Shown: positions 40,880 through 63,285 of the stretch, one piece after another
Layout of the letters: the number at the start of each line of letters is the position of its first letter
Position numbering within the stretch: the first letter of the stretch is position 1
From: Isurus oxyrinchus
Taxonomy: Eukaryota
Assembly: GCA_026770705.1 (NCBI GenBank)
Contig: JANJGN010000041.1
Coordinates: 5,704,001-5,768,000 of the forward strand
Direction: 5' to 3'
Length of the DNA stretch: 64,000 bases
Notes under the pieces: model-generated
Database searches by the model: none
What the model saw: the letters and a program-made list of their open reading frames with translations, nothing else
What the model was told of the DNA's origin: nothing
Program-made: the position numbers and the translations under genes

Positions 40880-41078
40880 TTTGACTCTCAGGAGTTGAAT
40901 ATAATGCTTTTATCCCACAGACAAGCAGTAAATTGCTGCTCTATCTTCAGGGGAAGGTCACTCCCCCGACCTTGCCGAACGGTGCCAGACAGGATAGCGA
41001 CTGGTGACAGCACAGTTCCGTTTCAGAGGCAAACATTTAACCAAAAGAAGAAGTCTTAAATTTAGAAATATTTACCTA
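40880..41078 (+). other. Shared upstream element of defensin-like module A
   Basis: tgccagacaggatagcgactggtgacagcacagttccgtttcagaggcaaacatttaacc...ttagaaatatttacc aligns to 48785-48990 (inverted), 50300-50490 and 54930-55085. Confidence 0.8.
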
Positions 41079-42049
41079 ATGGGGCTAATTTATAATTTAG
41101 GAGAGGAAGACACTGACATTAAGATGCAGGATGAGATGGAGAAATGAGGATAATATACACGGTGGAACAGACGAACGGAGTGAGACGGAGATTAGAGAAT
41201 ATCATCGAGTCAAAGACAGGTAGAGAGTGAGCGAAGGAAGTGGGAGAGAGATGGCAGAGAGGGAGATGCAGCGAGAGAGTGAGAGGAAATACTGATAGAG
41301 AGAGAGGCAGAGAGACTTATCTAGAACCGGATAGAGAAATAAAAGGAGAGGGAGAGAGGGAGAGAGAAGACGGGAAATGTTAAAAAAATGAACAAGTGAA
41401 ATGAGTAAACCCCTGAAGAGCCTTCCGCTTCTCGAGCTTCCCCAAAGCTGGGAACAGACAAACATTTACTACTGAAAGGTCGACAATGTTTCAAGCAACA
41501 TACTTCATCATCGAGTTAATAACAAGGTCGTCTGTTTTTTCTGATACTGCTCAACTGAACAATATCACTTCCTGCGTCCCAGGGAGAACGCTTCATTTAT
41601 TGTCACAATTGACACAGCCGGAGTGGGCTTTTGGAAGATTGTAAGAAACAGATTGAACATAATTGGCAGAGGAACCCGATGACATATGTGGGAAAATGTA
41701 TTTTCACATAGCCTGACCATGTGATCTGTAAGGTTCTTCCTGAAAGGGGAATGGAGGAAGGTACGATGGTGAATTAAAAACGAGGAGATGTGGACATAAT
41801 TGAACGGGTAAACAGAGCGATGACAGAGCAATGGGGAAAGTGAAAAGATCGAGTGGGCAGGATTTGGTAGATATTTCATAACACCCAGCAGAGGCTCAAT
41901 GGACCAAATCGTGCTTTTCTCTTCTGATTGGCTCTTACTTTAAACACCGTTCTGAATTATTTTGAACCTTCACTATGTCACTCATTGCACAGATATGTCT
42001 CTCTATTGATTAACAAGTATCCGGCTTGGGAGACTGTCTCTTTCACATG

Positions 42050-42251
42050 CTCAAAGTGGAGAAAATCGTCATGGTGCGTGTGTTATTATTAACTACTGAA
42101 CAGTCAGTCAGTTCCTATAACGAGCATCCGTACTCCTGTTATCGCATTGGCACTCTGAGGAGATCAAATGACGTAGAAATCTCTGTTTTTGTGCTTGGAT
42201 TAATGGCCATGGCAGGGCCGCTTTACAGCCACAATCATTATACTACCTGAG
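42050..42251 (+). pseudogene. Beta-defensin-like copy A: promoter and signal-peptide exon 1 relic
   Basis: aaagtggag...gtgcgtgtgttattattaactac...tataacgagcatccgtactcc...ctctgagg aligns to 51335-51450. Encodes ISVFVLGLMAMAGPLYSHN, with an in-frame TGA just before the phase-1 donor G|gtcagt. Start codon lost. Confidence 0.7.
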
Positions 42252-42909
42252 GTCAGTGTATTTCACATTAATCGCTATAGATCAATATTGAATGGAAAAG
42301 GAGGTGTCCATTCAGCCCCTGAAGCCTGTATCTCTGATCAGTTGACAATTGGATGATGTGCACTGACCATCATCGCTCCAATTTATTTCCATAACCATTA
42401 AAACACTTATCAAATGTAAACCTATCAATTTCGGTTTTGGATCAATTCAACTAAAATGTATTGATGGCATTTTATTTATTGTAGGTTTGTCCAGTCTCCA
42501 TCAACATCATGCAATAATCTGCCTGTAACCCCCTCATGTGTCTCATTCACATGCTGTCCCTCAGCGATTTATTACATTCACTCTATACCATGCTGTCAAC
42601 ACACACCCTATCCACCATCGTATGATATTGTCTTGTCTGACAACCTTGCAAGATAAGTGGGCACCACAATTCTGCCTGATTCTGTATGCCCTGATATCAG
42701 TCGTTTCCTCATTGACGGCTGTGTCTTCTGTGGCTGGGGACAGATTCTTCAGCATTCCACTAAAACCCCCATGATTATTTTTCTCTATGGAAATTATTTT
42801 TCCTTATGCTACTGCTGAATCGCTCGCTTATCTCTAGATTTTGAATGCAAGATACGAGTTGTTTCCATTTTCGCTGTGCACAGGCAGGGTAACTGTATCT
42901 CTTGCTTAG

Positions 42910-43025
42910 ACCTCCCTTTGAGCACAGTGCCCAGAAGGAATCTCCAAATCCCTCGGGTAGACCACAGTAAGAACACTGTTCACTATTCTGGTATCAACAT
43001 TCCACTGTTCGTCCACACTTGGAAC
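42910..43025 (+). pseudogene. Possible exon 2 relic of defensin-like copy A
   Basis: Acceptor tctcttgcttag. Weak nucleotide similarity to copy C exon 2 (agcacagtgcccagaaggaatctccaa versus tgcacaaaatatggtgggaaatgccga) and to its 3' UTR. Cys codons are lost. Confidence 0.3.
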
Positions 43026-45354
43026 AATGATGGTCATCAATGAATTGTTCCTTTCACTTCGCCGGGCCTCACCATAGAACGTGACCTGATTGGAGGGAGA
43101 CACAGACTTGACAACTGTAAGGCAGTCAGGACCCGCGTCAGACAATGTTGTTGTCTGACATTCGACAGCAACAAGAGTAAGTGAGTTACTACAACTAAAT
43201 GTTTATCATTTGAGAGTTGCCTGAGGCCTTGTCTGAAGCTCACTGTAATTTCTGCAATTCATGATCTGCCAAATTGCTTAGATCTGATGACCCATTGCTC
43301 CCTGTTTCCTAAAAACTGTGAAGAAAACACAGTGCCTTGCACAATGCTTTTTGTCCAGCAATAAAGTCTCAACTTGGATCGGTGTGTTGCCATATTGACA
43401 GGTTTGGACGGGAGATCAGAAAATGGCAGGGCGGCAGTGACATCATGCAGCGGCAATATAGTCATCTGTGCAGAACACAAAACTTCCAAACAATGTCCGA
43501 GGAATGTTTCCCACCATCACTGATATGCCTTCTGATAGTATGATACTAGCAGGAAAGATACTCTAGGAATGATAATAAAGTGCCTAACAGCCGAGACGGG
43601 ATGACATTGAAAGGCCCCAACATTGACTATAGGCACTACAGTGTCTCAAACAGCATCAGGACAAACACGGGAAAGGAAGATTCCTGCTTCATCCCATCTC
43701 CCAGTCTCTGTAAGCAGATGAATATTTAGGTCCCCACCCTCCAACACATTTTTGACACGACTTGAAAGAAAACATGGCTGCGAAAAATGCACCCTGAATG
43801 TCAGTCTTGAATGGCAATTTTCAATTATGACACCGAACACCAGTACAGACGAGTTAGGCCAGGACTAAAAGGACAGACTGTAATGGTTCTAGAAGGCAGC
43901 TCATGATGAACTACTTCAAAAATATGCCCAGAAATGTGAAAGTGGTTGATGTATCTCGGCCTCATCCTGAGTCGTCCAATATCACAGGTATCAAAATTTA
44001 GCCATTTTATTTCACAATGGTATCATTGAATGAGACAAATTCAATACACACAATCTCCGTGCAGTAGGACTGAAGACGTGAATTGCCCCTCAGACAGACA
44101 GTCTTTTCAATTTGAAGAGCAGCATGCTGCTCACACTGTCTTAAAGGGTGTCACACGGGATTGTTTGTTTCACACATTCTCTCAAACAGAGTCCACGCAC
44201 CAACAACCTCTGCCCATCCCAAATGCCTCCAATCCAGCTTTGGAGAATATCATGCAAGAGTTGGAGTGATTAACAGTTTAGTGATCAATGTTTGAACGTC
44301 GCCATGTGTACTCATTATAAGAGCTAGATGACCTTGAGATGGAAATTGCACATGGAGCTTCCAGGAGAGATGGATGAAAACTCTGAAATTGGCCAGGAAA
44401 TCCCTCAGAAAGGATGGCAGCAGCCCAGAGATAAATATGCAGCAAGGTTATCCTCAGAAATATTTAGCCATCTGGGCAGATGGATATGAAGTTTGAAAGA
44501 GACAAGGAGATATAGCACAGGAGAAGGTTGGAGAAGCAATGAGAAAATAGGTAGGCGACCATAGGGCTGCAATGCAATCCGGTTTTCAGAAAGAGGAATG
44601 GTGATAATAGGGAAAATATCTACTTTCAAACAGGGAGCTTTTAGTGTCTGGAATGAACTGACTGAGAGTCAGCAGCAGACAGATTCCATCGTGGCTTTTT
44701 GAAGGGGATTCAATCACTATCTAGCAAGGAAAGATATACAGAGCCACGGTGAAATCGGGTGGTTAGAGCCTCGTTGAGAGTCCCTCGCTGAGTGGAAGCT
44801 CAGTGACGAAGGACAATGTTTACCTTCTGCTTGGGAATCATTGGATGATTCTATGGGGGAGAGGGTGAGTGTGAAATGGAGCAAGAGAAAATAATCGTGA
44901 CACAGTCACGGCAAAAATAACAACAGGTTTAGAGAGGTTAAGGCTGCGGGAGAAATGGATTCAGACAGAGAAAAACAGAAAAGGACAATTGAGTGAGAGA
45001 GTTTGATAACAGTTCAAGGTAAATGCGATTTTTCATTTACTGAATCAAACACAAATGCACAACACGATATAACAGTTTTCTTCAGAAATGTGCAAAAACA
45101 GCAGGATCAGCACCAAAAATAAAGGAAAATACCTTAGGTAGCTTATACTTTAAGTTATGAAACATGATCGTTCACTTAATACTTGTAATGAAAACCAGGA
45201 AAATAAATAAATAAACAAATATAAAAACAAAAATATGGATACATAGATAATTAAATAAGTAAATAAATGGGTACATGAATAAAAATATGACTAAATCAAA
45301 ATAAATAAATATAGATTGATTCCTTAATACGTAAATATAAAGGTAGGTAGGTAA

Positions 45355-45519: not shown

Positions 45520-45662
45520 CTGGAAATTCAAAACAAGAACAGAATTACAGTTCAACAGTTCTGTTGAAGGGTCGTGAGGACAGATAACGTCAAATGTTTT
45601 CTTCTCCGCCAATGCTGCCAGACCTGCTGAGTTTTTCCAGGTCATTCTGTTTATGTTGTAGA
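45520..45662 (+). mobile_element. Penelope-like terminal fragment
   Basis: agttctgttgaagggtcgtgaggacagataacgtc...tgctgccagacctgctgagtttttccag. Confidence 0.6.
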
Positions 45663-46110
45663 NNNNNNNNNNNNNNNNNNNNNNNNNNNNNNNNNNNNNN
45701 NNNNNNNNNNNNNNNNNNNNNNNNNNNNNNNNNNNNNNNNNNNNNNNNNNNNNNNNNNNNNNNNNNNNNNNNNNNNNNNNNNNNNNNNNNNNNNNNNNNN
45801 NNNNNNNNNNNNNNNNNNNNNNNNNNNNNNNNNNNNNNNNNNNNNNNNNNNNNNNNNNNNNNNNNNNNNNNNNNNNNNNNNNNNNNNNNNNNNNNNNNNN
45901 NNNNNNNNNNNNNNNNNNNNNNNNNNNNNNNNNNNNNNNNNNNNNNNNNNNNNNNNNNNNNNNNNNNNNNNNNNNNNNNNNNNNNNNNNNNNNNNNNNNN
46001 NNNNNNNNNNNNNNNNNNNNNNNNNNNNNNNNNNNNNNNNNNNNNNNNNNNNNNNNNNNNNNNNNNNNNNNNNNNNNNNNNNNNNNNNNNNNNNNNNNNN
46101 NNNNNNNNNN
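45663..46110. other. N run (gap or masked sequence)
   Basis: 448 N followed by (GATA)n. Confidence 0.98.
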
Positions 46111-46116
46111 ACAGGC

Positions 46117-46235
46117 AGATAGATAGATGGAGAGATAGATATATGGATAGATAGGTAGCTAGATAGATAGATAGATAGATAGATAGACAGATGGATAGAT
46201 GGAGAGATAGATATATGGATAGGTAGATAGATACA
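46117..46235. repeat. (GATA)n microsatellite
   Basis: agatagatagatagatagatagatagacag is directly visible. Confidence 0.95.
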
Positions 46236-46683
46236 TAAATAAATTGTTCAATTATTAGAAACGCAATTAATTAATTTGCCAATCGGTCAACCTATCAAGC
46301 GATTGATTAATTGCACATGCTCCCACACAGACCCATGAAGTTTCTGCTGGAAAAAGCATAGTGGAGCAGTGACTCTGGTACCAACAGCGTATAAGAACAC
46401 AATAACATCCTCCTGTGCCTCTCCTGCTACACCAGCTGATTTGTTTTCTCATCCTGGCCTCACTCTAACCCCTCCCCCACCCCCACGTTCATTGTACAGA
46501 GAAGAGCAATTTTCGAAGATGCCTTTGATTAACAAGTCCGTTTCCCATTACAATTCTAACAGGCGCTCAATATAGCCTAGCAGCAGAACACTTGCTACTT
46601 TTGGTGATGTCCGTTTGAGGCTCTTGATTGAATTCTTCTAACCAAGATATCGCCAGAGGCTAAACGAGGGCTTAACTGGGACC

Positions 46684-47560: not shown

Positions 47561-47823
47561 GGTGGGGGGAGTACCGTAATTGAAGTGCAGGGCAAAGCAG
47601 GAGACAGTGAGATATTCAAAATAATGCACTGTTGAATATTTTACAATTACACAGCCGTGAGGTTGTGGCGTCTTTTGATGAAAAGATGTTCAAAGTCCAG
47701 AAACAAAGTGGGTAAACGTTGCTGAGGTGCAGGTTAAAAAACTGCAATTCTATGTTGGAAGAGCCCCGGCGTCCCAGTGCCTATCTATAGCGCTATGTGT
47801 TGGATACTGAGAGATATACTGAA

Positions 47824-47913
47824 GTGCCAATTCTGAGGGTACACTGAACATCGGACAGTAAATGGCTGTTTCAGCACCAAGACACCAAATACCAAGAGCA
47901 GCCTTTTGACCGT
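47824..47913 (-). pseudogene. Beta-defensin-like copy B, signal-peptide exon 1 relic
   Basis: ctgaggaactcagcagaaaACG GTC AAA AGG CTG CTC TTG GTA TTT GGT GTC TTG GTG CTG AAA CAG CCA TTT ACT aligns to copy C. The start position reads ACG. The donor is decayed to ttcagtatatctct versus gtaagtatgtctct in copy C. Confidence 0.75.
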
Positions 47914-47987
47914 TTTCTGCTGAGTTCCTCAGTCACAATGAGATGATTGGAATATGGAACAATTTCGATTGGCTCAGGAAGCATCTT

Positions 47988-48119
47988 NNNNNNNNNNNNN
48001 NNNNNNNNNNNNNNNNNNNNNNNNNNNNNNNNNNNNNNNNNNNNNNNNNNNNNNNNNNNNNNNNNNNNNNNNNNNNNNNNNNNNNNNNNNNNNNNNNNNN
48101 NNNNNNNNNNNNNNNNNNN
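47988..48119. other. N run (gap or masked sequence)
   Basis: 132 N covering the proximal promoter region of copy B. Confidence 0.98.
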
Positions 48120-48784
48120 CATCTTTGACATATAAGAAGAGCCCAGTGATGGAGATCAAGAGTGACTTAATCAATGATTAAATGTGTTGCCAAAGCTGTT
48201 TTTTTTTAATTAAAATCCATCAGTAAGTCATATTAATCATTCTCCTTGGGGGAATTTATAAGAATCACCGGCTGAAATTAAATAAATTAAAAACATGTAA
48301 AATTTAATCCTTGTTGCCTTCCACTTAGTTCATTTTCCAATTATCTTTATTGTGTTTTTACTGGTTACCTAAGCTCCTACTCCCTAAGATAACCCACAGC
48401 GTCTGTGAGCTGAATACTTGGCTGGGACATTTATTTGTCCACCTGACATAACTGAACCAGGTGATCAGGTCATTACCTCTTCAGTGGGAGCTTTCTGTAC
48501 ACCGATTGGCTATCACACTTTCCACATTACATCATTGATGACAACTAAAGATTTTTTTCGGGAAATCTTCCAGAAGTTCTGACGCTGCGAATTATGGTAC
48601 AGAAATGCAATATTTTTTTTTTCTAATTCTATTTGCACCTCTCCATCCATCTTCGTCCTAATACTCTCCCTCCTGCCTCCCTGAGATTATGTTGTTTCTC
48701 TTTCTCTATCTCGCTATGCTTCTCTAACTTATCATTTGCATCTCCTTCTTCACCCATTCCGTTCGCCATCTTTCATTCACTACC

Positions 48785-48990
48785 TCTCCGTTAAATATTT
48801 CTAAATATAAGTCGTTGGTGTATGGTTAAATATTTCCCTCTGAAACGGAAATGTCCTGTCACCAGGTGCAATCCTGTCTGACACCCTTTTTGCGAATAGA
48901 AAGGAATGAGCTGTACCTGAATATGAAGCAGCAGCTCACAGTCTGTCTGTGGAGACAGTACACAATCTCTGAACTAATGAGTTTTCAAAT
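48785..48990 (-). other. Shared upstream element of defensin-like module B (inverted)
   Basis: Reverse complement gggtgtcagacaggattgcacctggtgacaggacatttccgtttcagagggaaatatttaacc...ttagaaatatttaac matches 40981-41078. Confidence 0.85.
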
Positions 48991-49059
48991 CCCATCACAC
49001 TACTTTATTAAAACCTCTGCATTATTCTAGGTTTAATGTTGTCTGGGTCGAAGTATCCA

Positions 49060-49665
49060 CAGACAGAAGGAGACTGGGAAAGAAAGCTGGTGAGTGGGGA
49101 GAGAGAGAGAGATAGAAAGGACAACATAGCTGGTGAGAGAGTAAAAGTGAGAGAGACAGGGCAAGACAGTTTGTGCAGAGTGAGAGAGGAAGAGAGTGAA
49201 TGAGACAGGGCAAGAAATCTGGTGAGAGAGAGCAAGATACGGGGCAAGAAAGCTGGCTAGAGAGAGAGAGAGAGAGAAAGAGAAGGGACAGTGAGAGAGA
49301 GAGAGGGCTTGAAACCCGGTGAGGGAGAGAATGTGCGACAGGGCAAGAAATCTGGTGAGAGAGAGCAAGATACGGGGCAAGAAAGCTGGCTAGAGAGAGA
49401 GAGAGAGAGAAAGAGAAGGGACAGTGAGAGAGAGAGAGGGCTTGAAACCCGGTGAGGGAGAGAATGTGCGACAGGGCAAGAAAGCTGGTGAGAGAGAGAG
49501 AGGGGAGAGCAAGAGAGAGATAGAGAGAGAGAGAGAGGGCAATAAAGCAAGAGAAAGAGAGGGAGCGAGAGAGAGAGACGGGTAAAGAAAACTATTGAGA
49601 CTGAGAGACAGACGCAGATAGGGCAAGAAAGCTGATAAGAGAGAGAGATTGAGAAAGGGCAAAAA
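49060..49665. repeat. GA-rich tandem repeat containing a near-exact duplication of about 133 bp
   Basis: gacagggcaagaaatctggtgagagagagcaagatacggggcaagaaagctggctag...aatgtgc occurs at about 49204 and 49337. Confidence 0.9.
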
Positions 49666-49689: not shown

Positions 49690-50270
49690 CATCACGGGAT
49701 CCCATATTCCTCACATCTGTTATCATCAAGGAAAGTGATCAGGCCTGGTTCAATCTGGAGTGTAAGAGAGAACGTTAGGAACAGCATCACCCACATTTAA
49801 ACTCCGGGACCAACTTTCTGAAGCTGCAACACAGGACTACATGCAAGACAAACAGCGAAAGCAGCAAGCGATACTCAGCTAGGCACTCAAAAAAGCAACA
49901 GTTCAGATCACATTTGTGCGGCCCAACCCGTCCACTTCTAAATGGTGATGGACAGTAGAACAACTAAATGGAGAAGGGGTTTCCTAAAATATCCCCATTC
50001 TCAATGATGAGGTAGGTGAGCTTGCAAATAAAAAAAAGACAAGGCTTAATTATTTGCAACCACCTTCTGACAGTCGTGCTGATTGGATAATATACATGGG
50101 CCTCCTCCTGTGGCCAACCAAAGCACAAATTCCAGTCTTCAACCGTTTCTCTTCACTCCACAGGTTATACATTATATGGCTGAAGGCATTGAATACCATC
50201 GTGGATGACGGACTCTGAAAATGTTTTGGCAGTTTCTAAAGACTTTCACCAAGGCTAGTTCCAGCAACCA
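49690..50270 (+). mobile_element. APE-RT LINE fragment
   Basis: cctggttcaatctggagtgtaagag...aatggtgatggacag...aaatatccccattctcaatgatg...tttgcaaccaccttc, same family as 5030-5260. Confidence 0.6.
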
Positions 50271-50299
50271 CTTGCATTCAATTTATTTTTCCGGTGATA

Positions 50300-50490
50300 T
50301 TTAGACATTCAGCTTTTGTGAGTTTGTGTTTTGCCTTCATAGATCGACAGTGTTCCGCTGGCACACATTCAGGGACAGCTGATTCTTTAACCGTGCTAAA
50401 GGCTGTCAGAGAGGATGGGGACAGAGCAGCTCCTTTTGAGAGGAAAAATGTTAACAAACCGTCAACCCATAAACCTTAGAAATATCTATC
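50300..50490 (+). other. Shared upstream element of defensin-like module C
   Basis: attcagggacagc...tgtcagagaggatggggacagagcagctccttttgagaggaaaaatgttaac...ttagaaatatc aligns to the other three copies. Confidence 0.8.
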
Positions 50491-51397
50491 CACCTGGGCA
50501 GCTGGGTAAAGCTGGGTGAGAGATTCAGAGAGAGAGCAAGAACAACGGGAAGCTGTGGACAGTGGTTGAGGAAGGGACAGACAAAAATGCAGAAGGAGAT
50601 AGCGTGATATAAGCACGAGGGATCCATTGTTAGCTTGACAGGCAGAGAGGAGAGAGGGGAAAAAAAGGAGATGAAGGAAGAGGTGGAAGCATTTATAGAA
50701 TAAAAACAACATTTACATTCGTATAGAGCCCTTAAAACGTAAGACTGTCCCAAAGAATTTCTCCATCAATATTCAAGCGCCATCAGTGATTTAACTTCCT
50801 GGAGACAATTTTCCCTTCGCAGACTACCCCTGATGAATACTAGTTGGCTAATCTTCATCTAACGGTGGCCCCATACTATTATCCAGACTGGGACATCTGG
50901 TGGTCAGCAGAACGACATTGAAAATAATTGCAGACAACAGCAAACTGAACTATATGGAAGCTGAGGAGACTGCCACTTAACACAGTTAGTTGTTGTGATC
51001 TAGAATGCTCTGCCTGACGGTAGGTTCAACAGGAACTTTCAGAATATGAGGTGTAATAATAACTGAAAGGAATAAACTGCAGGACAATGTGGAGACAACA
51101 TGTTAAAGGTGCTGGACTTAGTTTGCTGGTTCAAAGAGAAAGCATCTACTCAATGACTCGAAGGGCGTATTCTGTTTATGCTACTTACTAGAAGGACAGC
51201 AAATGCGTTCTTCCTAAGTGGGATCATTACCCAAATTGGACCATCAGAAATTAAGTAAATCGAATTTCGTTGTGAGACAAGCTTCTTCTTTGACTCCCAA
51301 TACAGTTCATCTAATTTATTGGTTTAATCTTCAATTAAAGTGGAGGCTGTCCGCTCAGTGCGAGTGTGATTATTAACTACCGGATCCTTTATGAGCT

Positions 51398-51405
51398 TAT
51401 ATAAA
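51398..51405 (+). promoter_or_regulatory. TATA box of defensin-like copy C
   Basis: TATATAAA, 60 nt upstream of the ancestral start position (51458). The equivalent position in copy A reads cctataac. Confidence 0.7.
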
Positions 51406-51457
51406 CAGCATCAGCACTCCAGCTATCACACTGCGTCTCTGAGGTGCTCAGCGGAAG

Positions 51458-51547
51458 ATTAAGACGGTGCTTTCTTGCTACTTGGAGTCCTGGTGATGAC
51501 GCAGCCCATCACATCCCAGCAGCTCCATTTCCTTATGGATTTTATTG
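51458..51547 (+). pseudogene. Beta-defensin-like copy C, exon 1 (signal peptide, damaged 5' end)
   Basis: ATT AAG ACG GTG CT- TTC TTG CTA CTT GGA GTC CTG GTG ATG ACG CAG CCC ATC ACA TCC...TTT ATT G|gtaagt reads (M)KTV(L)FLLLGVLVMTQPITSQQLHFLMDFI. It has ATT at the start position, a 1-nt deletion, an in-frame ATG at 51496 and a consensus phase-1 donor. Confidence 0.8.
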
Positions 51548-52039
51548 GTAAGTATGTCTCTACGTAATCTACATTGTGAAATATTGTCAGGTGCAGGAGG
51601 AGGCCATTTCGCTCCTCATGGTATTTTCAAAATAAAAAGATATTTTTTTTCAGATCGATACCTCAACTGCATTAGCGAACATTGATTCTGGAAACTTTAA
51701 TGATGTTTCCTCATATAAAATATATCAAGGTGAATTTCGACTGATTGAATACTATTGAAATATGCTAATATTTGGATGTATGGGCATTATCTCCAACTTT
51801 TTGCCATCTTCCAAAGATTCTTCCTTTCTCCCTGTCTGACTTCCCATCTGTTCGCAGCCACCGCTAATATCAGGTATAAACAAAGCATTGGCTTCCATAC
51901 ATCCGCAGAGGAGCCTAACTTGCCAGCTTGTGGTGCAACCTCGCCGTTTCTTCAACATTAACAGGTGACTGATCGAAAACCCGTATCAGCAAAGTTTTCC
52001 ACCAAATCGAATATATTTATACACCGCTTGGGACAATGA

Positions 52040-52720: not shown

Positions 52721-53155
52721 GGCGATTAGATGTATGATGCTGTTTGATAGAGCTCCTGTGAAGCAGTTTGGGTTGCAATATTGGGTGATCTCAGTTCCTG
52801 TTGTTTTATAAGATACGGAAAGTTCTGCTTGGTAGATGGAGGGAATATACTGTGACTTGTGGTCGGTAGCAACAATCTACGAAACGCCAACATATAAAAG
52901 TCACTAATAAAAGCAAGAAATAACATAGTGGAAACCTTTTTCACTCAGGAAGCAATGAATATGTGGAACTGGCCAGCACAGGGAGTGTTTGTGGTAAATA
53001 GTGTAGATGTATTTAAGATGAAACTGGATAAGCATGTGATAGGGAAAGTATTTCTATGCAACATCACATTCATCATGTGAGTCTAACATCTTATTGCCTC
53101 ACTGTTCTCCTACGCAGTCATACAGAGTGATAAATTTTCTGTTGCTACGTTTCAG

Positions 53156-53271
53156 GTCAATTATTCGGTTGCACAAAATATGGTGGGAAATGCCGAGAAT
53201 TGTTGTGGGGGCCACGTGAGCCTCTGCTACCTCAAATATGTCTCTGGAGCCGTCTCTGCTGCAGGAGTTAG
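53156..53271 (+). pseudogene. Beta-defensin-like copy C, exon 2 (mature peptide, open frame)
   Basis: Acceptor ttttctgttgctacgtttcag, phase 1, matching exon 1. Reads GQLFG C TKYGGK C RELL W GPREPLLPQI C LWSRL CC RS*, i.e. C-x6-C-x4-[W, TGG]-x10-C-x5-CC: beta-defensin spacing with Cys3 replaced. Confidence 0.85.
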
Positions 53272-53395
53272 TCATCTACCATAATGCATTAAGATGTGAA
53301 CCCGTCTGAGGCTGAGGCAGAAGACAATATTTAATCAGGGTTCACTTGATTATAGAGGCCCCGCGATTCCAGACCCACTGCTGTATGGAAATGTG

Positions 53396-53401
53396 AATAA
53401 A
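53396..53401 (+). terminator. Polyadenylation signal of copy C
   Basis: AATAAA 125 nt after the exon 2 stop codon. Confidence 0.6.
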
Positions 53402-54929
53402 TGTTGCTGCATTCATCATCACCTTTATTCATGGTCTCATTTATCACTCAGATCAGCTGATGGTCATGTTGAAATGGAGAGGTTCGGGGAGAGCGGGGTG
53501 TGGGCCATCAGAGAATGGCAGGGTCACATTGTCATTTCATAGCTCCAACATAGCCTCACACACACAGAATATCACCCGTCTGCCAATTCCACAACGTTAC
53601 AGACCCCACATGCCTCGTATGGTCAGTTTCCCTGGGAGGGTGGAAGTAATTGAACACTGGCATTCAGGCCGGCGGACAAGATCGGAGAGCCCTTAACAGT
53701 TAGTACAGATACCGCCCTGCATCATGGCATCAGGACAAACATGATTTTGTGATCTCCATGTCAGTAATCACATTCTGTCCTCCTGATGCAGAGTGGCTCT
53801 GCCATTATAATTAGGGGTGAAAGCTAGCTGTGTGATATGTTAATGAGACACAGTATACATCATCACAGGAAGTGAGGCAACGTTTAATGATCTTGCATTT
53901 TCTTTTCGACTTCATGGCAGGCAGAAGCTACAGTAAAGATATTTCTCAATTAAAACTTAATGTTTTGAATACATCAGTAGAAATTGTAAATATTCTGTGC
54001 AGTAATCACGATACCGTTTACATTATATGATGGCAGTGAGAGAACGATCAAACACAGGAAGTCCTAGCAGGGGCAGAAAGCTAAGAGCAGGCGGTAAATC
54101 TGAACCAGGCAGACACTTGGCTGAGTTGGCGCCTGTTTTTTGGCATATCTTGCAAGATTTGGTGTCTCCCTGAAAAATATAGCTTTGGGCAGGTCAGTGC
54201 GATATTAAAGATTGTTGGTGGCTGTGCAGATAATATCTTCGACTGGAAAGGGAGTGAAGCAGAACAAATATGTTGCAATGAAGTAATAAAAACACCCAAT
54301 GCCTACTTCTGCCTTTTAAATAATACCAATATCCTGCCACTTAGATTTAAGAAGCAATCACAGCAAAAAGGGAAATGAATGAATACACTTAACGACGGCC
54401 TGCATGGACTTGCAGAGAAATGTGAACATGGCAGCTTAATGCTGAACAAAGCAAGAACAGATTAGGCCTTGGAGTCTAGGATGTAGCATTGCTTCACCAA
54501 TTGCAGTGTGTGGATGATTGTACCTTAACACAGGCAATTCATCCCAGCAGAGAAGCTGAGTTCAAGATATAGACTCAATCCATGATTGGTGCTGTCAGGG
54601 GGAAATATGCCGCTAAAGTAAACATAGTTTCAGTGAAATAGGTTAACCTTAAAAACAGAGAGGGAGCCCTGAAAGAAAAGAATGGAAGGCAGGAGGATCG
54701 TACAGCAACTTCCCAGCTAAATGTTTCAGTGTGGTGGGAAGGAAGGGAGAGCGGGTGAAGTGTGGAAATTATCCCTCCAAAGAATTTGGAGGACAGTTGT
54801 TCCAGAAAGAGTGGTGACTTTCAGTTGCAAGTCACAGTCAGATGCTAGGACAGAATAATTGAAATGAAAAAAAAAATAAACATCAAAAGAGAAATCAATT
54901 TCACAGGACATGGCGTCACGTCTTGTGAT

Positions 54930-55085
54930 AATGCATACTGCCTCTCATTCGAAAGGGAGATGCTGGGACAAATTCAGGGGCAGCAGACGCCTCAAACCAG
55001 GCTGGTGTGTCAGAAATGATGGGAGCTGTTACAGAGCAGTCCTGCATCAGATGCAAATAATTAGGAAACCGAAAAGGAATGTGTT
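54930..55085 (+). other. Shared upstream element of defensin-like module D, split by a LINE and resuming at about 56371
   Basis: gctgggacaaattcaggggcagcagac...tgtcagaaatgatgggagctgttacagagcagtcc aligns to 50357-50435. cagaaatatttaac follows the LINE. Confidence 0.7.
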
Positions 55086-55089
55086 TTTT

Positions 55090-56370
55090 ATTGTAAATCC
55101 ATTCACAGAATGTGGCCCCCTTGGCGAGGCCAGCACTTACTGTCCATCATTAAATCTCATTGAGAAACCGCCGGTGAGCTGCCTTCTTGAAGCACTGCAG
55201 TCCATGTGTTTTAAGCCTCATTTCGGTTAGACAGGGGGTTCCAGTGTTTTTATCCAGTGACAGTGAAGCAACAGCAATATTTTTTAAATTAGAAAAGGCG
55301 AGTGGTTTAGATTGGATCTTACAGCGGGTGGTGCCTCCATGCAGCAGCATCCATTGTCCTTGTAGGTAATCTTGGATTTTAAGGTGCTTTCCACAGAATC
55401 GTGCTGGGTTCCTGAAATGCATCTGGTAGATCGTAGATAAGACTGCTACTCTGTGTCGATGGTGGTGCATCATTTGCCAATAAAGCAGCTTGCATTGTCC
55501 TGGATGGTGTCAAGCATCTGTAGTGTTGTGAGACAGGCATTCATCCGGGCAATTGCATCACACTCTTGACGTCCGTCTTCTTGATACTGGACCTCATCTG
55601 GGATGTCAGGAGTCTAATAACTCGCCGCGGGATTCCTGGAATCTGATCAGACCTTAGAGCCATCGAATTTGCATGGCTATTCCAGTTCACTTTCTCGAAA
55701 AGGGAAATCCCCAGAATTAGGCGATGATAAATTCATTGAGTGTCAATTGGAAATGCTTGTGGGAATATTCATTCCCTGGCACTTGTGTGGCGCAAATGAT
55801 ACTTGTCTCTTGTAGCCTTTGCATTGTCCAGGTCTTGCTGCATATGTTCATGGACCGCTTCAGTTCCTGAGGATTCACGAACGGTGCCTAACATTGTTCA
55901 ACCATCCTTCTGTGACCTTATGATGTATAGTTGGTCTATGATAAAGAAGCTTAATGTGCTTCTCCCGCATCCCCGATTCCCAAATAATCCATTTTTGAGG
56001 GGTCACTGATGCCGCATTTGGTCAAATGCAGCCTTGATTTTAAGCACCCTGTCTCCCACCTGAACTCTGCACTTTCGCCTTTTTTTTTCCATGTTTGAAC
56101 CAAGGCTGTAACATGGTCAGGAGCTCAGTGGCCCTATTGGATCCCAAACTGAGCGTCTGTAAGCAGGTTATTGCAGAACAAGTGTCGTTTGATTACACTA
56201 TTAATGACACCTTCCACGACTTTGGTAATCGAAAGAAGTTTAATGGGGCGGTTATTGTCTTGGTTGGATTTGCTTTGCGTTTTGTGGACAGGTCATAGCT
56301 GCGCAATTTTACCACAGCCGGTAGAGACTACTGTTTTGGCTGCACCAGAACATGTTGGCTGGTGGGAAAT
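55090..56370 (-). mobile_element. APE-RT LINE, 3' 1.3 kb
   Basis: Tail ccattcacagaatgtggcccccttggcgaggccagcacttactgtccatc...ggtgagctgccttcttgaagcactgcagtcc. RT-region remnant atttggtcaaatgcagccttgat. Confidence 0.75.
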
Positions 56371-57895: not shown

Positions 57896-60800
57896 ACTAG
57901 ATACGAACACCCACAGTCGTTGGGACAGTGAGTTGGGCCATCCCAGGGACCAGACCCGAACACACCCAGATCTCGGGACAATGATGTAGTCCAGACAATG
58001 ATCTGAACACGATGAAAACCAAATGTCGGAAAAGGGAGCTGAACGAGAGCAGGGACTATACACGAAAACCCCAAGACCCCGGGACAGTGAGTTGACAGAC
58101 AGCAGTGACTAGCCCCCAAAACTCCCACACCTCGGGTACAGTGAGCTTATACAACCCAGGGTCTAGACACGAGCAACCCAAGACCACCGGACACTGAGGT
58201 GGTCCAGTCCAGTGTCTAGTCCCGCATACCCCCAGGCCACAGGGCTGTGATTTGGCACAACCCAGTGATCAGACCTGGATACCTCCAGACCTCTGGTACA
58301 ATGAGCGAGCCCAGCCAATGGACCAAACATGAAAACTCCCAGACCTCAGGACAGTAAGCTGGTGCAGCCCAAGAACCAGACACAAAAACCCTACAACTTG
58401 GGGGAGTGTGCTGACCCAGCCCAGGGACGTGACCCGAATGAACACAGAGCTCGGAGTAGTGAGCTGGCCCAGCTCAGGGATTAGACACGAACATCTCCAG
58501 ACATTGATTCAGTGAGCTGGCCCAGTTCTGGGACTAGACCCGAACACCCTCAGACATCGGGACACTGAGCTGGCTGAGCTCAGGGAATAGACCCAAACAC
58601 CCTTAGACCTCGGGACACAGAGCTGGCCCAGCTCAGGTACTAGACACGAACACCCTCAGACCTCAGGACAATGAGGTGGCCCAGCTCAGGGACTAGATGT
58701 GAACATCCTCAATTCTCGGGACACTGCTCTGTTCCAGCTCAGGAACTAGAAACAAACACCCCCAGACCTCGGGACAGTGAGCTGGTCCAGCTCAGGGAAT
58801 AGACACATAAACCCGCAGACCTCTGTAATGTGAGCATGATGAGCCCAAGGACTAGATCTTTATGCTCCCAGACCTCGGCAGAGTGAGCTGGCCCAGCCCG
58901 GGGTCCTGAATCGAGCACCAAAAGACCTCAGGACAGTGAGCGCCCCCAGCCCGGAGATTGGATATGAACATTCTGAAGGCTCAGGTGCAATGAGCTGGGC
59001 CAGACCAAGAACCAGAAACAATCACCCCCAGACCTCAGTACTGTAAGCTGCTCCATCCCAGTGACTAGAGGCGAACTCCCCTAGAAAACGGGACAGTGAG
59101 CTGGACCAGAACAATGATCAGACCCAAACACCATCACACCTCAGGACAGTGAGCCTGCCCAGCTTAGTGACCAGATCCAAACACCACCAGACCTCGGAAC
59201 AGTGAGCAGAGCCAGCCCAGGGACTAGCTGTGAAAAAACACCAGACCACTTCTAGATTGAGCTTTCCCAGCCAAGGTACTGGACACGGACACTCCCAGAA
59301 AATGGGACAGTGAGCTCACCCCGAACAGGGACTAGACCCAAACACCATCTGACCTCGGGACAGTGAGCTGAGCCAGGCCAGCGACTAGACGCAAAAAAAA
59401 AAAGCAGACCACTTGTATCTTGAGTTTGCCAAGCCCAGGGACTGGACGCGGACACTCCCAGAAAACGGGACAGTGAGCTGGGCCAGAACAGGGACGAGAC
59501 CCAGCACCCCTTGAGCTCTGGACAGTGAGCTTGTTTAGAACAGGACCAACACCCGAACACCGACAGACCTTGAGTATAGTGAGCTGGCCAGACCAGGCTC
59601 TGGAACAGGACACCAAAGAACTTTGGGACAGTGAGCTCTACCAGTCCACGGACTAGACTTGAAGACCCACAGCGGTCAAGTACAGTGGGCAGGCCAGGCC
59701 CAGGGACAGGACAGGAACAATCCCAGAACTAAGATCAGTGATCTGGCCCAGCGCAGGGACTAGACCCAAATACTCCCAGAGTACGGGACAGTGCTCTGGC
59801 AAAGTTCAGGAACTGGAACTGAACACAACCAAACATCGGGACATTGAGCTTATATAGAACAGGGACTACACAAAACACCAACAGACCTCGAGTACAGTGA
59901 GCTGGCCCAGACCAGGCTCTGGACCAGGGCACCAATGTACTTTGGGACAATGAGCTGAAAAAGTCCACAGACTTGAACTGAATAACCCCACAGGTTGGGT
60001 ACAGTGAGTAGGCCCAGGCCAGGTGCAGGAGACGAACCATCCCAGACCACGGGGCAGTGAACTGACATAGCCCAGTGACTAGACGTGAACACCCCAAAAC
60101 CTTGGGACAATAAGCTGGACAACTTCAGGGACAAGAGACGAAATCCCCCAGGCCTCGAGTACAGTGAGATGGTCCGCACCAGGGACCAGACCCGAAAAGC
60201 CCCAGAACTCAGGACAGTGAGCTGTTCTAGCCAAGGGACCGGACACAAACACCCCCAGAACTCAGGACAGAGAGTTGTCCCAGCCCAGGGACTGGAGTGG
60301 AACACCCACGGGCCTCGGGACAGTGAGCTGGCCCAGCACAGAAGCGAGGCCAGAGCACCGCCTGACCTGAGGACAGTGTGGTGACCCAACCCCTTGACCA
60401 GACACAGACACGCTCAGTTCTCGGAACAGAGAGCTGACCTAGCCCAGTGTCTAGACCCAAAAAAACACAGACCTGCTTTACAGTGAGCTCGCCCAGCCCT
60501 GGTACTAGACCCGAAGACCCGCAGTGCTTGGGGAAGTGAGAGGGCCCAGCCAAGGGACCAGACCCAAACAAAAACAGTCATCAGAGTAGTGAGCTAGTCT
60601 AGCCCAGGAGCAGGACTCGAACACACCCCAGTCCACGGGACAGTGAGCTAGGCCAGCCCAGGGGCAGGACTCGAACACACCCCAGACCTCGAGATAGTAA
60701 TCTTGCCCTGCCCAGGGACTTGAATCGAGAAGTGAGCTGGTCCATGCAAGGCTCTATTACCAAACAACCCAAGACCTCGGGTACAGTGAAGTGGCCCAGA

Positions 60801-60900
60801 CCAGGGTCTAGATCCCAACACCCACAGAACCTGAGTCCGTGAGATGGCCAAGTGCAGTGAGCAGACCCGAACAATACCAGACTCTGGTCAGTGAGCTGAC
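57895..60900. repeat. Satellite array, unit about 53 bp, about 55 copies
   Basis: Consensus gggacagtgagctggcccagc(c/t)cagggactagac(a/c)cgaacaccc(c/t)cagacctc repeated head to tail. Confidence 0.95.
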
Positions 60901-60944
60901 TAAAAATGTCATACAGACATTAGCATAAACTTTATCATGCAGCA

Positions 60945-61585
60945 GGTTGTTAGGATCTGGAACGGGCTGTCTGAGAGTGTGGAGGATGGCGGGTGAATCG
61001 CGGGGTTAGGACTTAAATGTGCAGCCTGAGAGTGTGAGGGAGGGAGGGTATATCGAGGGATTGGCATTTCACATGCGTGGGCTGGGAGTGTGTGGCCAAT
61101 CGGGGGATTAGGATCTGGAATATGCTCCCTGAGACTGTGGGGGATGGAGGGTCAATCGAGGGGTCAGGATTTGGAATGCACTGCCTGAGCGGCTGGGGGA
61201 GGAAGGGTTAATCAAGGGGTTAGTACCTAGAACGTGCTGACTGGGAGTGTAGGGAGGGAGCATCAATCGAGGGGTTAGGATCTGGAACGCACTGCCTGAG
61301 ATTGTTGGGGTAGTGGGTCAAACGAGTAGTTAGGATCTGGAATGCCCTGCCAGAGATTGTGGGGGAGGGAAGGTCAGTCAAGGTGTTAGGATGTGGAACG
61401 CAATGCCTGAGACTCTCTGGGAGGGAGGGTGATTTGCGGTGTTAGGATCTGGAATGCATGGCCTGAGAGCGTTAGTGAGGGAGGAACAATTGATGGGTTA
61501 GGATCTGGATTGCAGGGCCAGAGAGTGTGGGTGAGGGTAGGTCAATCGAATGGTTAGGAGGTGGATTGCGCTGCCTGAGAGTGAT
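60945..61585 (+). repeat. G-rich minisatellite (about 56 bp, 11-12 copies) derived from a CR1 3' segment
   Basis: Unit gttaggatctggaatgcactgcctgagagtgtgggggagggagggtcaatcgaggg. CR1 3' sequence continues after the array to about 61740 (gcacagatacgacgggccaagaggcctccttc). Confidence 0.85.
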
Positions 61586-61999
61586 TTGGAAAGAGGGCCT
61601 ACTGAGTGGTTCCAGAGGAAATCGGTTTGTTATCTGCGAAGGAGGACTGTGCTGGGTTGACGGGATCAGGGGGGCATATTGATTATTTCCTCACTCACAA
61701 AGTCAGCACAGATACGACGGGCCAAGAGGCCTCCTTCGGCACGGCAACTGGAACAACAGGGTCTGCATTGGAATCTGTGCTGTCAGAGGGTCTATTTTTA
61801 GAAGCAGGCACAAACTGAAAACAGAAAGTGAGAACGTAAACTGGAAATGTTATAAAAATATAAAACAATGAAAGGAACTAGTCCCTGCACCTTACAAGAA
61901 AATGAAAACGAAAAAAGAAAGTTGTGGGGAAACGGAATCCGATTGAGTCCATATCCAGCGTCGCAGAGCCATCCACTACCAGTAGCGGCTGATCAGGAG

Positions 62000-62748
62000 T
62001 GTTATGAAGCACTAATATAGGTAATATTATCGGAAGTGTTTTTCATTCAGAATGGAGGTTTAGTCTGTGGGTGTGTCTTAACTGGATTAAAGCCAGCTGG
62101 TGATCTGCAGTAGTTTTGATACAGAAGTGAGGTAGAGTGAATTTGCATTTTTCTGAATGAAGCATTGAAGAAGTGGAGTGAGAGCTGACACCTGCCCAGC
62201 AGCTACAAAGCAATATTGTTTATATTACTGATAAAATCGGCACTATGAAAGGGGTTTTATTTGTTAAAGGAGTTTGGTTCAGATTTTGTTGATGATATAT
62301 GAATTCACATTCAATGGGGTGGTGAGTGTAACTTCAGCAGTTTTCGGTTGTGCAGGGCAGAGGTAATGGGAGATGAAAAGGCAGCTGTGAGCCTCCAATT
62401 GGCTCCACTGGAAGCAAAGTGAATAGAACATCATTTTGAATTCGCAAGGTGAAAACGTTTTGCCTGTATCTCGTTAATTCTAATGGTTGTTGTTACCTTA
62501 TTGGAGATTGGTTTGGGAATTTGCTATAAGTTATGATAGTATTAATTTTTAATCATGTGTTTTAACTAGTGCAAAATAATAAAATGTTTCATTTAGTTTA
62601 GTGTGAAATCTCGAAAACTGGTGGTCCAATTCATGAATTTAGTGTCGTATCTTAAACATAACACTTCAAATTGCAGGTAATGACACTTGTTTAAAGTTTG
62701 CCGCTGGGATTTTGAAATGAATTCATTTTACCAACTACATCGGTCAAA
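62000..62748 (+). mobile_element. Putative solo LTR
   Basis: Starts TGTTATG, contains AATAAA near 62578 and ends in a decayed ggtca.a terminus. No PBS or gag follows. Confidence 0.5.
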
Positions 62749-63154
62749 ATGAGAGTCCAGCGGTGCAGTACAAGCGGGCTGAAGAAAAGTCGAGGTGGAA
62801 AATGAGCAAGCACAAAAAATGCTTGCAGGGTTGAGCAACTTCAGTTCCATGGATCGATTGAAGAATTTGGGACTGTTGTCCTCAGAGATGAGATGGTCGG
62901 GAGAAGAGCTGCTCAAAATCATGACACGTCTGGGCCAGAGTGATTCAGGAGAAGCTGTTCACATTGGGGGAAGGAGGAAGAATCAAAGGGGTACAGGTTG
63001 AAGAGTACAGACTCACCCCAAGTCCTTGACATCCCCCCAAACCAAAAGTGCCAGTTATTGACGTGTGCCTTATTGCATGTGTAATGCATAGTTTTCAATG
63101 AACCATAATTCACTTGAAAATTCATGTTTAATTTAGACTCATTTTGCATTGCAG

Positions 63155-63285
63155 GCTACCAATGGTAGCTACGTCAGTTTTTAGTGTTTCCTTAGCTTGA
63201 TTCTTGTATGGGGCCAAACATCATTGGCTGAAAAAATATTTTTTGGAACTCCTGAGCCCATTAAAGTCTCTTCAAATATGCAGAG
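63155..63285 (+). pseudogene. Possible exon 2 relic of defensin-like copy D
   Basis: Acceptor ttttgcattgcag. ttgtatggggcca, aaatattttttggaac and agtctcttcaaatatgca resemble copy C ttgtgggggcca, aaatatgtctctggagc and agtcatctaccataatgca. Multiple stops. Confidence 0.3.

What the first reader, a model, noticed from the sequence alone, without database searches (positions are those of the whole stretch)
40880..63285. Cluster of up to four paralogous two-exon beta-defensin-like gene modules whose coding exons are missed by the ORF track
Seen: the same ordered cassette recurs: ~200 bp upstream element, GA-rich tract, CR1 3' piece (seen in A, C and D), promoter with TATA, signal-peptide exon, intron, Cys-motif exon. 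It occurs as A (+, 40.9-43.1 kb), B (-, 49.0-46.7 kb), C (+, 50.3-53.4 kb) and probably D (+, 54.9-63.3 kb). Known: vertebrate beta-defensins have a signal exon joined by a phase-1 intron to a C-x6-C-x3/4-C-x9/10-C-x5/6-CC exon, and evolve in clusters by birth and death. Inference: this is a cartilaginous-fish beta-defensin-like locus whose exons are too short for ORF finders. Functional paralogs probably exist nearby or elsewhere in the genome. I cannot confirm whether it is already annotated.
Basis: partly seen in the sequence, partly recalled or inferred. Interest (0 to 1): 0.85.

Follow-up and report, generated by a model that had tools for sequence, protein, structure and literature searches.

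The report
Decayed beta-defensin-like gene relics, duplicated
This stretch holds the worn-out remains of a small gene for a secreted, cysteine-rich defence peptide that was copied several times and then decayed, so it is a gene graveyard rather than a working cluster.

Summary
The repeated cassette is real but smaller than claimed. A ~200-bp upstream element occurs five times: four as reported, plus a new copy at 39888-40074. A purine-rich tract and a promoter/signal-exon block follow it only in A, B and C. Only A and C also share a block covering the second-exon end and the 3' flank. D and the new copy are lone upstream elements.

Copy C alone keeps a readable unit: TATA, signal-like exon, GTAAGT donor, phase-1 acceptor, C-x6-C-x4-W-x10-C-x5-CC, stop, AATAAA. 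That combination is expected about 7e-4 times per 3.3 kb by chance.

All copies are broken. None has an in-frame ATG before the hydrophobic core. A has stops, B has lost its donor, and C has Trp where Cys3 is expected.

Beta-defensin membership is not shown. Pfam, PDB sequence, fold and two large protein searches gave nothing, and no contig from four runs covers the exons. A protein-language-model search did place C's exon 2 nearest Defensin_beta clusters (0.85), which is a lead only.

Best reading (0.6): pseudogene relics of a beta-defensin-like family that evolves by birth and death. The scan's first readers noted similar clusters elsewhere on this genome piece; those notes are unchecked.

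The parts
39888..40074 (+). Fifth, previously unlisted copy of the ~200-bp upstream element. It stands alone: no GA tract and no exon follow it.
   Evidence: nhmmer E 9e-17 with a profile that did not contain it. The next 250 nt have purine fraction 0.49.
40861..41108 (+). Copy A, upstream element
   Evidence: BLAST against B, E 4e-24; alignment A1; nhmmer.
41109..41358 (+). Copy A, purine-rich (GA) tract
   Evidence: Purine fraction 0.77 against 0.49 for the window.
42042..42324 (+). Copy A, promoter/exon-1 block. The exon-1 relic is 42167-42251 and the donor GTCAGT is at 42252. The ATG at 42168 is in another frame and is followed by TAG. The signal-like frame ends in TGA just before the donor.
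   Evidence: C alone finds it at E 1.9e-17; frames; motif positions.
43078..43184 (+). Copy A, second-exon relic, placed by position only. Laid gaplessly on C, it has Cys at the places of Cys3 and Cys4 only. The places of Cys1, 2, 5 and 6 hold Arg, His, Ser and Asn.
   Evidence: The 3' anchor alignment starts at 43168. The gapless diagonal has 33% identity, z 1.9. Translation. The Atlas gave no usable hit.
43168..43670 (+). Copy A, exon-2 end and 3' flank, homologous to C 53258-53744
   Evidence: Reciprocal nhmmer, E 1.7e-8 and 1.3e-10; alignment.
48771..49007 (-). Copy B, upstream element
48521..48770 (-). Copy B, purine-rich tract
   Evidence: Purine fraction 0.68.
47988..48119 (.). Assembly gap inside copy B, where the 5' part of the promoter block would lie. 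Left unread.
   Evidence: N run listed. B's homology begins at 47985/47986.
47774..47986 (-). Copy B, exon-1 block. The signal-like relic is 47916-47830. There is no in-frame ATG in the read sequence. The donor position reads GC (or TT in the other alignment), so the donor is lost.
   Evidence: An A+C profile finds it at E 5.2e-11. Translation. ATG positions. Alignment.
50290..50521 (+). Copy C, upstream element
50522..50771 (+). Copy C, purine-rich tract
   Evidence: Purine fraction 0.69.
51326..51620 (+). Copy C, promoter/exon-1 block. TATATAA is at 51398. The signal-like frame 51463-51547 is preceded directly by TAA. The first in-frame ATG (51496) lies after the hydrophobic core. The GTAAGT donor is at 51548, in phase 1.
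53156..53271 (+). Copy C, second exon. The acceptor AG is at 53154-53155. The 37-residue peptide reads C-x6-C-x4-W-x10-C-x5-CC, with net charge +4 (counted by hand). The stop comes two codons after CC. The Trp codon is 53206-53208.
   Evidence: Nearest Atlas clusters are Defensin_beta.
53396..53401 (+). Copy C, AATAAA, 125 nt after the stop
53258..53744 (+). Copy C, exon-2 end and 3' flank, homologous to A
54901..55112 (+). Copy D, upstream element only. It is followed by a dispersed repeat and, from 57.7 kb, by tandem arrays.
   Evidence: No exon-1 or 3' block was found.

Best explanation
The region is a graveyard of an old, locally duplicated gene unit of about 3 kb. The unit once encoded a small secreted cationic peptide with six cysteines, of the beta-defensin type.

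THE UNIT, IN ORDER: a ~200-bp upstream element; a purine-rich tract; a dispersed-repeat tail; a TATA promoter; a signal-peptide exon; a phase-1 intron of about 0.8-1.6 kb; an exon for the mature peptide; and a 3' flank of about 450 nt.

WHAT IS SHOWN: the unit was copied in both orientations, and the copies have since drifted to about 50-66% identity. A and C keep both exon relics. B keeps the first exon. D and a fifth copy keep only the upstream element. Every copy carries disabling lesions.

WHAT IS INFERRED: none of the copies makes a peptide. The ancestral product would have been exported by its signal peptide, folded on three disulfides, and acted as a cationic host-defence peptide. This follows from what is known of beta-defensins in general. 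Working relatives, if any, lie outside this window.
For: HOMOLOGY BLOCKS
- Upstream element, pairwise E 4e-24 to 6e-7, plus an independent fifth copy at E 9e-17.
- Exon-1 block in A, B and C, confirmed with the tested copy left out, E 2e-17 to 2e-9.
- Exon-2 end and 3' flank shared by A and C in both directions, E 1.7e-8 and 1.3e-10.
- None of these blocks occurs elsewhere in the 64 kb.

COPY C
- It has TATATAA, a hydrophobic signal-like frame, GTAAGT in phase 1, a pyrimidine-rich acceptor in the matching phase, five of six Cys at beta-defensin spacing, a stop two codons after CC, and AATAAA.
- The compound pattern (5-of-6 Cys, stop within 6 codons, phase-1 acceptor) occurred 38 times in 174 Mb of second-order Markov sequence. 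That is 7e-4 per 3.3 kb of one strand. It occurs once in the real window, at C.
- The 37-residue peptide has net charge +4 (counted by hand).

COPY A
- Laid gaplessly from the 3' anchor, A has Cys where C has Trp, and Cys at the place of Cys4.

FAMILY RESEMBLANCE
- The Atlas feature search on C's exon 2 gave best named clusters PF00711 at 0.85 (183 of 256 features) and 0.82, and PF13841 at 0.77. Recognition was 2964. All ten best hits fall in one family or clan.
- A control peptide from the same locus, A's relic, gave no usable hit.

NOT A HIGH-COPY REPEAT
- Contigs of four runs at >=80% likeness pile on known repeat pieces, but none lies on the upstream elements or the exons.
Against: - No Pfam family at E<=10 for C exon 2, C exon 1 or B exon 1 (0 of 3).
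- No PDB sequence match at E<=10.
- The AlphaFold model was poor (pLDDT 63.2). Foldseek gave 0 matches at E<=0.001, and none of the 25 weak matches listed is a defensin.
- The exhaustive phmmer search of 1.84 billion representatives gave 2 hits at E 5e-4. Both are long repeat proteins, not kin.
- The word-indexed search found no candidate for either accepted query.
- No six-Cys motif occurs anywhere in the window.
- A loose 5-of-6 Cys pattern alone is cheap: 4 in the window, a mean of 1.15 per simulated window, and 69.5% of 200 simulations had at least one.
- My compound criteria were set after I had seen copy C.
- The Atlas score is under 0.9, which the tool calls a lead only. A third of shuffled proteins also get ten hits in one clan.
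- A's exon body is barely above noise (z 1.9; 105 of 2999 diagonals do as well).
- No RNA run was listed as holding the stretch, and no contig or splice joint covers the exons.
- The taxon was not verified.
Confidence: 0.6

Rival explanations
1. These are relics of a different, lineage-specific family of small secreted cysteine-rich peptides. The cysteine spacing only resembles beta-defensins by convergence, and the unit is not a member of that family.
For: Every direct family test failed: Pfam, PDB sequences, fold search and protein searches. Only 5 of 6 Cys are seen. Short disulfide-rich peptides are known to converge on similar frameworks (general knowledge, recalled).
Against: The exon plan (signal exon, phase-1 intron, mature-peptide exon), the spacing C-x6-C-x4-?-x10-C-x5-CC with Gly two residues before Cys2, the short tail after CC and the positive charge all fit beta-defensins. 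The Atlas's nearest named clusters are all beta-defensin families.
Confidence: 0.2
2. No gene was ever here. The cassette is a duplicated piece of non-coding or transposon-derived DNA, and the 'exons' of copy C are a chance reading.
For: No long ORF, no transcript evidence and no homologue were found. Partial Cys patterns are common: 32 windows ending in CC with at least 4 Cys, and 1.15 loose 5-of-6 hits per simulated window. The region is full of repeats and tandem arrays. The upstream element has no ORF and no conserved RNA fold.
Against: The compound exon-2 signature is expected 7e-4 times per 3.3 kb. It sits in the right phase downstream of a signal-like exon with a consensus donor, and that exon is conserved in three copies. 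The blocks occur nowhere else in the 64 kb. They drew no contigs at >=80% likeness, while true dispersed repeats nearby drew many.
Confidence: 0.13
3. At least one copy, most likely C, is still a working gene. It would use an unseen upstream start or a non-AUG start and make a five-cysteine variant peptide.
For: C keeps TATA, donor, acceptor, an open second exon, a stop and AATAAA. The runs available were small and kept as contigs, which cannot show absence.
Against: A TAA directly precedes the signal-like frame, and the first in-frame ATG lies after the hydrophobic core, so no signal peptide would be made. Cys3 is Trp, which leaves an unpaired cysteine. No listed run holds the stretch, and no contig lies on either exon.
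Confidence: 0.07

Closest known systems
Vertebrate beta-defensins (Pfam PF00711 Defensin_beta and PF13841 Defensin_beta_2), described in bony fish and in other vertebrates
   Same: A two-exon plan with a signal-peptide exon joined by a phase-1 intron to the mature-peptide exon. Cys spacing C-x6-C-x4-(C)-x10-C-x5-CC, with Gly two residues before the second Cys. A short tail after CC and a cationic mature part. Clustered paralogues in both orientations, with pseudogenes. The family features are recalled; the features of this locus come. Nearest Atlas clusters.
   Different: There is no HMM match. Only 5 of 6 Cys are present in the best copy, and none of the copies has a start codon before the signal core. 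No expression was seen. The host appears to be a cartilaginous fish, a group for which my seven literature searches found no described beta-defensin. The 2019 review PMC6795676 (section 14, read in full) names only transferrin, squalamine and kenojeninin I as cartilaginous-fish antimicrobials.
Big defensins of amphioxus, molluscs and horseshoe crabs, proposed ancestors of beta-defensins (recalled; no paper read here)
   Same: A beta-defensin-like six-Cys C-terminal domain encoded on its own exon.
   Different: Big defensins carry an extra hydrophobic N-terminal domain. Here the first exon encodes only a signal-like stretch of about 28 residues.
Birth-and-death beta-defensin clusters of mammals and birds, which include pseudogenes (recalled)
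   Same: Local duplication of a few-kb unit in both orientations, followed by decay of most copies.
   Different: The copies here are far more diverged (50-66% identity), and all five are dead. The duplicated unit carries a recognisable 200-bp upstream element that also survives alone.

Membership tests
Vertebrate beta-defensin (PF00711 / PF13841) | Six cysteines spaced about C-x5-7-C-x3-5-C-x8-11-C-x4-7-CC | tested here: not met
   No six-Cys match in any of six frames. C's exon 2 has five, with Trp at the third place. A's relic has Cys only at the third and fourth places when laid gaplessly on C.
Vertebrate beta-defensin (PF00711 / PF13841) | Match to the family's profile HMM | tested here: not met
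   hmmscan against Pfam-A at E<=10 found no family for any of 3 peptides: C exon 2, C exon 1, B exon 1. HMMER's filters drop very weak matches.
Vertebrate beta-defensin (PF00711 / PF13841) | Signal-peptide exon joined by a phase-1 intron to the mature-peptide exon | tested here: inconclusive
   In C the donor GTAAGT (51548) and the acceptor AG (53154-53155) fit phase 1 and keep the frame. No read or contig shows the splice.
Vertebrate beta-defensin (PF00711 / PF13841) | Precursor starts with Met followed by a hydrophobic signal peptide | tested here: not met
   Hydrophobic cores are present in A, B and C, but none has an in-frame ATG before the core. A's ATG is out of frame and followed by TAG. 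C's frame is preceded by TAA.
Vertebrate beta-defensin (PF00711 / PF13841) | Three-stranded beta-sheet fold held by three disulfides | tested here: inconclusive
   The single-sequence AlphaFold2 model has pLDDT 63.2 and pTM 0.28. Foldseek against PDB gave 0 matches at E<=0.001. The model is too poor to decide.
Vertebrate beta-defensin (PF00711 / PF13841) | Cationic mature peptide | tested here: met
   C's exon-2 peptide has 2 Lys and 4 Arg against 2 Glu, net +4 (hand count on the translation).
Vertebrate beta-defensin (PF00711 / PF13841) | Paralogues clustered in tandem or inverted arrays | tested here: met
   Three copies of the exon-1 block and five of the upstream element lie within 15 kb, on both strands.
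Vertebrate beta-defensin (PF00711 / PF13841) | Detectable sequence relatives among known proteins | tested here: not met
   phmmer against 1.84 billion representatives found only 2 spurious repeat proteins. The word-indexed search found no candidates. A 37-residue query has little power at this database size. The Atlas feature search points to Defensin_beta at 0.85, a lead only.
Vertebrate beta-defensin (PF00711 / PF13841) | Conserved neighbouring genes of beta-defensin loci | not tested
   The window shows no long ORF that looks like a flanking gene, and sequence outside the window was not available to me.
Dispersed transposable element | Many scattered copies across the genome | tested here: not met
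   The blocks occur only between 39.9 and 55.1 kb of the 64 kb. They drew no contig at >=80% likeness in 4 runs, while repeat pieces at 50980-51017, 52961-53034 and 55053-55200 drew many. A whole-genome count was not possible.

The most novel reading that the evidence does not exclude
This window is one decayed corner of a large, unannotated beta-defensin-type gene family in a cartilaginous fish. The family would be spread in many clusters over several megabases of one chromosome. Each unit would carry its own conserved ~200-bp upstream module. If intact, expressed members exist, this would be the first such family described in this vertebrate class. It would place the two-exon, phase-1 beta-defensin gene plan at the base of jawed vertebrates.
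Probability: 0.35. Interest if true: 0.6.

Novelty: new member of a known kind. Interest (0 to 1): 0.4.

Why it matters
Beta-defensins are a main class of vertebrate host-defence peptides. In the papers I could search, none is described from sharks, rays or chimaeras. If the relics here belong to a real family with living members elsewhere in the genome, that gap would be filled. The age of the two-exon gene plan could then be dated, and annotation pipelines that miss such short exons could be corrected. This window by itself adds only dead copies. Its value is as evidence of long-running birth and death, and as a source of search probes: the exon-1 block, the exon-2 peptide and the 200-bp upstream element.

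Tried and rejected
WHAT LED NOWHERE OR WAS REJECTED
- Strict and loose Cys-motif scans. There is no six-Cys motif. The loose pattern alone is not beyond chance, so I rejected it as stand-alone evidence.
- The 5-of-6 hit in A's intron (42480-42557) is Ser/Thr/Pro-rich and its first Cys would be cut by the nearest acceptor, so I took it as chance. The hits at 35.4 kb and 58.2 kb lie in low-complexity arrays.
- A search for second exons in A, B and D by Smith-Waterman, tblastn, an acceptor-plus-ORF scan and nhmmer found nothing on its own. A's relic was recovered only through 3' flank homology.
- D has no exon-1 block, no 3' block and no GA tract.
- Pfam, PDB sequences, AlphaFold plus Foldseek, protein searches and Rfam gave nothing usable.
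- The upstream element read as a coding exon has no frame open in all copies. Read as a structured RNA, its consensus energy is -1.14 kcal/mol with 1 compensated pair of 12.
- Special constraint on the upstream element: its pairwise identities (53-66%) are no higher than those of the exon-1 block (53-59%).
- RNA evidence: 5 runs of the same species label were listed, none holding the stretch. Four were laid at >=80% likeness and only repeat pieces were covered.
- Literature: seven searches found no paper on beta-defensins of cartilaginous fish. I read section 14 of PMC6795676 in full, and passages only of PMC10707392, PMC7350212 and PMC9363672. Subscription journals and database annotations are outside this search. 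No supplements were opened.

Full report
WHAT WAS CLAIMED

THE REPEATS
- A self-comparison of the window at normal sensitivity linked only A and B, over 97 nt.
- A more sensitive BLAST showed the ~200-bp upstream element in A (40871-41074), B (48997-48792, minus strand), C (50299-50488) and D (54916-55071). E-values ran from 4e-24 to 6e-7. It also showed a second collinear A-C block at 42053-42320 / 51337-51616 (E 2e-13).
- The four elements align at 67% mean column identity.
- A profile of them found a fifth copy, not used to build it, at 39888-40074 (E 9e-17). It found nothing in the first 39.8 kb.
- A purine-rich tract follows the element in A, B and C, but not in D or the fifth copy.

THE FIRST EXON
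- The promoter/exon-1 block is present in A, B and C. Because B was in my first profile, I repeated the test without it. An A+C profile finds B at E 5e-11, C alone finds A (2e-17) and B (6e-10), and B alone finds C (2e-9). A alone does not find B. No other place in the window is hit.
- The shared frame reads as a hydrophobic signal-like stretch in all three copies. B and C share 8 of 13 residues in the core.
- None is intact. In A, the ATG at 42168 is in another frame and runs into TAG, and the signal-like frame ends in TGA just before the donor. In B there is no in-frame ATG in the read sequence, and the donor reads GC or TT depending on the alignment. In C the frame is preceded directly by TAA, and the first in-frame ATG lies after the hydrophobic core.

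THE SECOND EXON
- Only C has a readable one. After a pyrimidine-rich acceptor (AG at 53154-53155), and in the phase left open by the GTAAGT donor at 51548, 37 codons read C-x6-C-x4-W-x10-C-x5-CC. A stop follows two codons later, and AATAAA lies 125 nt further on.
- No six-Cys motif exists anywhere in the window.
- A loose 5-of-6 pattern is cheap. There are 4 in the window, a mean of 1.15 per simulated window, and 69.5% of 200 simulations had at least one.
- The compound of pattern, nearby stop and phase-1 acceptor is rare. It occurred 38 times in 174 Mb of second-order Markov sequence, or 7e-4 per 3.3 kb of one strand. It occurs once in the real window, at C. These criteria were fixed after I had seen C, so the figure is generous. 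It still makes chance an unlikely explanation.
- Direct searches with C's exon 2 found no sister exon in A, B or D.
- C's 3' flank, however, matches A at 43220-43670 (E 1.7e-8). The reverse search finds C (E 1.3e-10). The alignment begins inside the exon ends, at C 53258 / A 43168.
- This places a second-exon relic in A at about 43078-43184. Its body is nearly saturated: 33% gapless identity against 25+/-4% on other diagonals, with 105 of 2999 diagonals doing as well.
- On that gapless register A has Cys where C has Trp, and Cys at the fourth place. The other four places hold Arg, His, Ser and Asn. Between them the two relics show a cysteine at all six expected places. That is suggestive, not proof.
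- B has no recognisable second exon or 3' block in the 1.7 kb read downstream of its first exon. It could be lost, or it could lie in the gap at 45663-46110.
- D has none. The 8 kb after its upstream element is a dispersed repeat followed by tandem arrays, including a 53-bp array of 53 copies.

THE GAPS
- The two gaps at 45.4-46.1 kb lie between units, next to simple repeats.
- The gap at 47988-48119 lies inside B, just upstream of its exon-1 relic. B's match to the A/C block starts at the gap edge, so part of B's promoter block is unread and continuity cannot be verified.
- No coding frame crosses a gap. I filled nothing.

IS IT A BETA-DEFENSIN?
Direct tests failed.
- Pfam gave no family at E<=10 for any of three peptides.
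- PDB sequences gave none.
- The single-sequence model was poor (pLDDT 63.2), and Foldseek found nothing at E<=0.001.
- phmmer against 1.84 billion representatives gave two hits at E 5e-4. Both are long repeat proteins sharing a short motif.
- The word-indexed search found no candidate for C's exon 2 or for B's exon-1 ORF.
- A 37-residue query has little power in such searches, so these blanks are weak.

One independent lead points the other way.
- The Atlas feature search put C's exon 2 nearest clusters carrying PF00711 (0.85 with 183 of 256 shared features, and 0.82) and PF13841 (0.77). Recognition was 2964, and all ten best hits lie in one clan.
- A's relic, used as a same-locus control, gave no usable hit.
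- The tool rates scores under 0.9 as leads only.

EXPRESSION AND COPY NUMBER
- No listed run holds C's unit.
- Contigs of four runs of the same species label, laid at >=80% likeness on 50200-55200, cover only short dispersed-repeat pieces: 50980-51017, 52185-52259, 52961-53034, 53829-53895 and 55053-55200.
- No contig lies on the upstream elements or either exon, and no joint was seen.
- The runs are small and kept as contigs, so this does not prove silence. It does argue that the unit is not a high-copy repeat.

THE UPSTREAM ELEMENT
- It has no frame open in all copies and no conserved RNA fold.
- It has no Rfam match, as with the rest of the window.
- It is no better conserved than the exon-1 block.
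- I take it as a non-coding part of the duplicated unit. Whether it was regulatory is unknown.

LITERATURE
- Seven full-text searches found no paper describing beta-defensins in cartilaginous fish.
- The 2019 review PMC6795676 (section 14, read in full) lists beta-defensins for teleosts. For cartilaginous fish it names only transferrin, squalamine and kenojeninin I.
- This does not cover subscription journals or automatic genome annotation.
- The family's defining features as I state them (Cys spacing, the Gly-x-Cys motif, exon plan, disulfide pairing, big-defensin ancestry) are recalled, not taken from a call.

EARLIER NOTES OF THIS SCAN
- First readers noted beta-defensin-like clusters 900 letters beyond this window, and about 1.1, 4.2 and 4.5 Mb before it and 0.97 Mb beyond it. 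Some are said to be intact. All are unchecked, and I could not read those places.
- One note on this window says copy C keeps a transcription unit with three coding lesions. My reading of C agrees: no usable start, a frame shift between the ATT-AAG frame and the signal-like frame, and Trp at the third Cys place.

VERDICT
There are two two-exon relics (A, C), one first-exon relic (B) and two lone upstream elements (D and a new one).
The resemblance to beta-defensins is real in gene plan and cysteine spacing, but membership is unproven and all copies here are dead.
- The taxon was not verified, because organism names are coded.
- Interest is moderate. It rests mostly on what the wider family might prove to be.

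Noticed in passing
window 57896-60720: A G+C-rich minisatellite with a 53-bp unit and about 53 copies, 62% matches.
   Followed up: partly
window 38522-39378 and 39669-39780: A tandem array with 48/54/108-bp periodicity just upstream of the fifth upstream element, with short inverted pieces of the same unit at 39669-39780.
   Followed up: no
window 49204-49537: A purine-rich 133-bp unit repeated 2.2 times at 99% identity, which implies a recent duplication. It lies on the plus strand right beside B's upstream element, which is on the minus strand, so that element has purine-rich tracts on both sides.
   Followed up: partly
window 61097-61580: A 56-bp tandem array (8.7 copies) whose unit resembles the tail motif of the dispersed repeat seen at 50980-51017 and 52961-53034.
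   Followed up: no
window 53842-53906, 44082-44163, 44405-44488: Weak partial copies of the upstream element lie downstream of the 3' flanks of C (inverted, 72% over 65 nt against D's element) and of A (nhmmer E 0.0035 and 0.012). They may mark old unit boundaries.
   Followed up: no
window 45172-45354 and 46117-46241: The two larger assembly gaps are bordered by A+T-rich simple sequence and by an (AGAT)n run of about 31 copies. The 143-nt island at 45520-45662 between them looked to me like repeat-derived sequence, though I ran no test of this beyond a weak chance tblastn match (E 0.07).
   Followed up: no
window 55053-55200 and 40658-40734: A dispersed repeat that drew many contigs in all four runs sits directly after D's upstream element. 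An inverted copy (73% over 77 nt) lies just before A's element.
   Followed up: no
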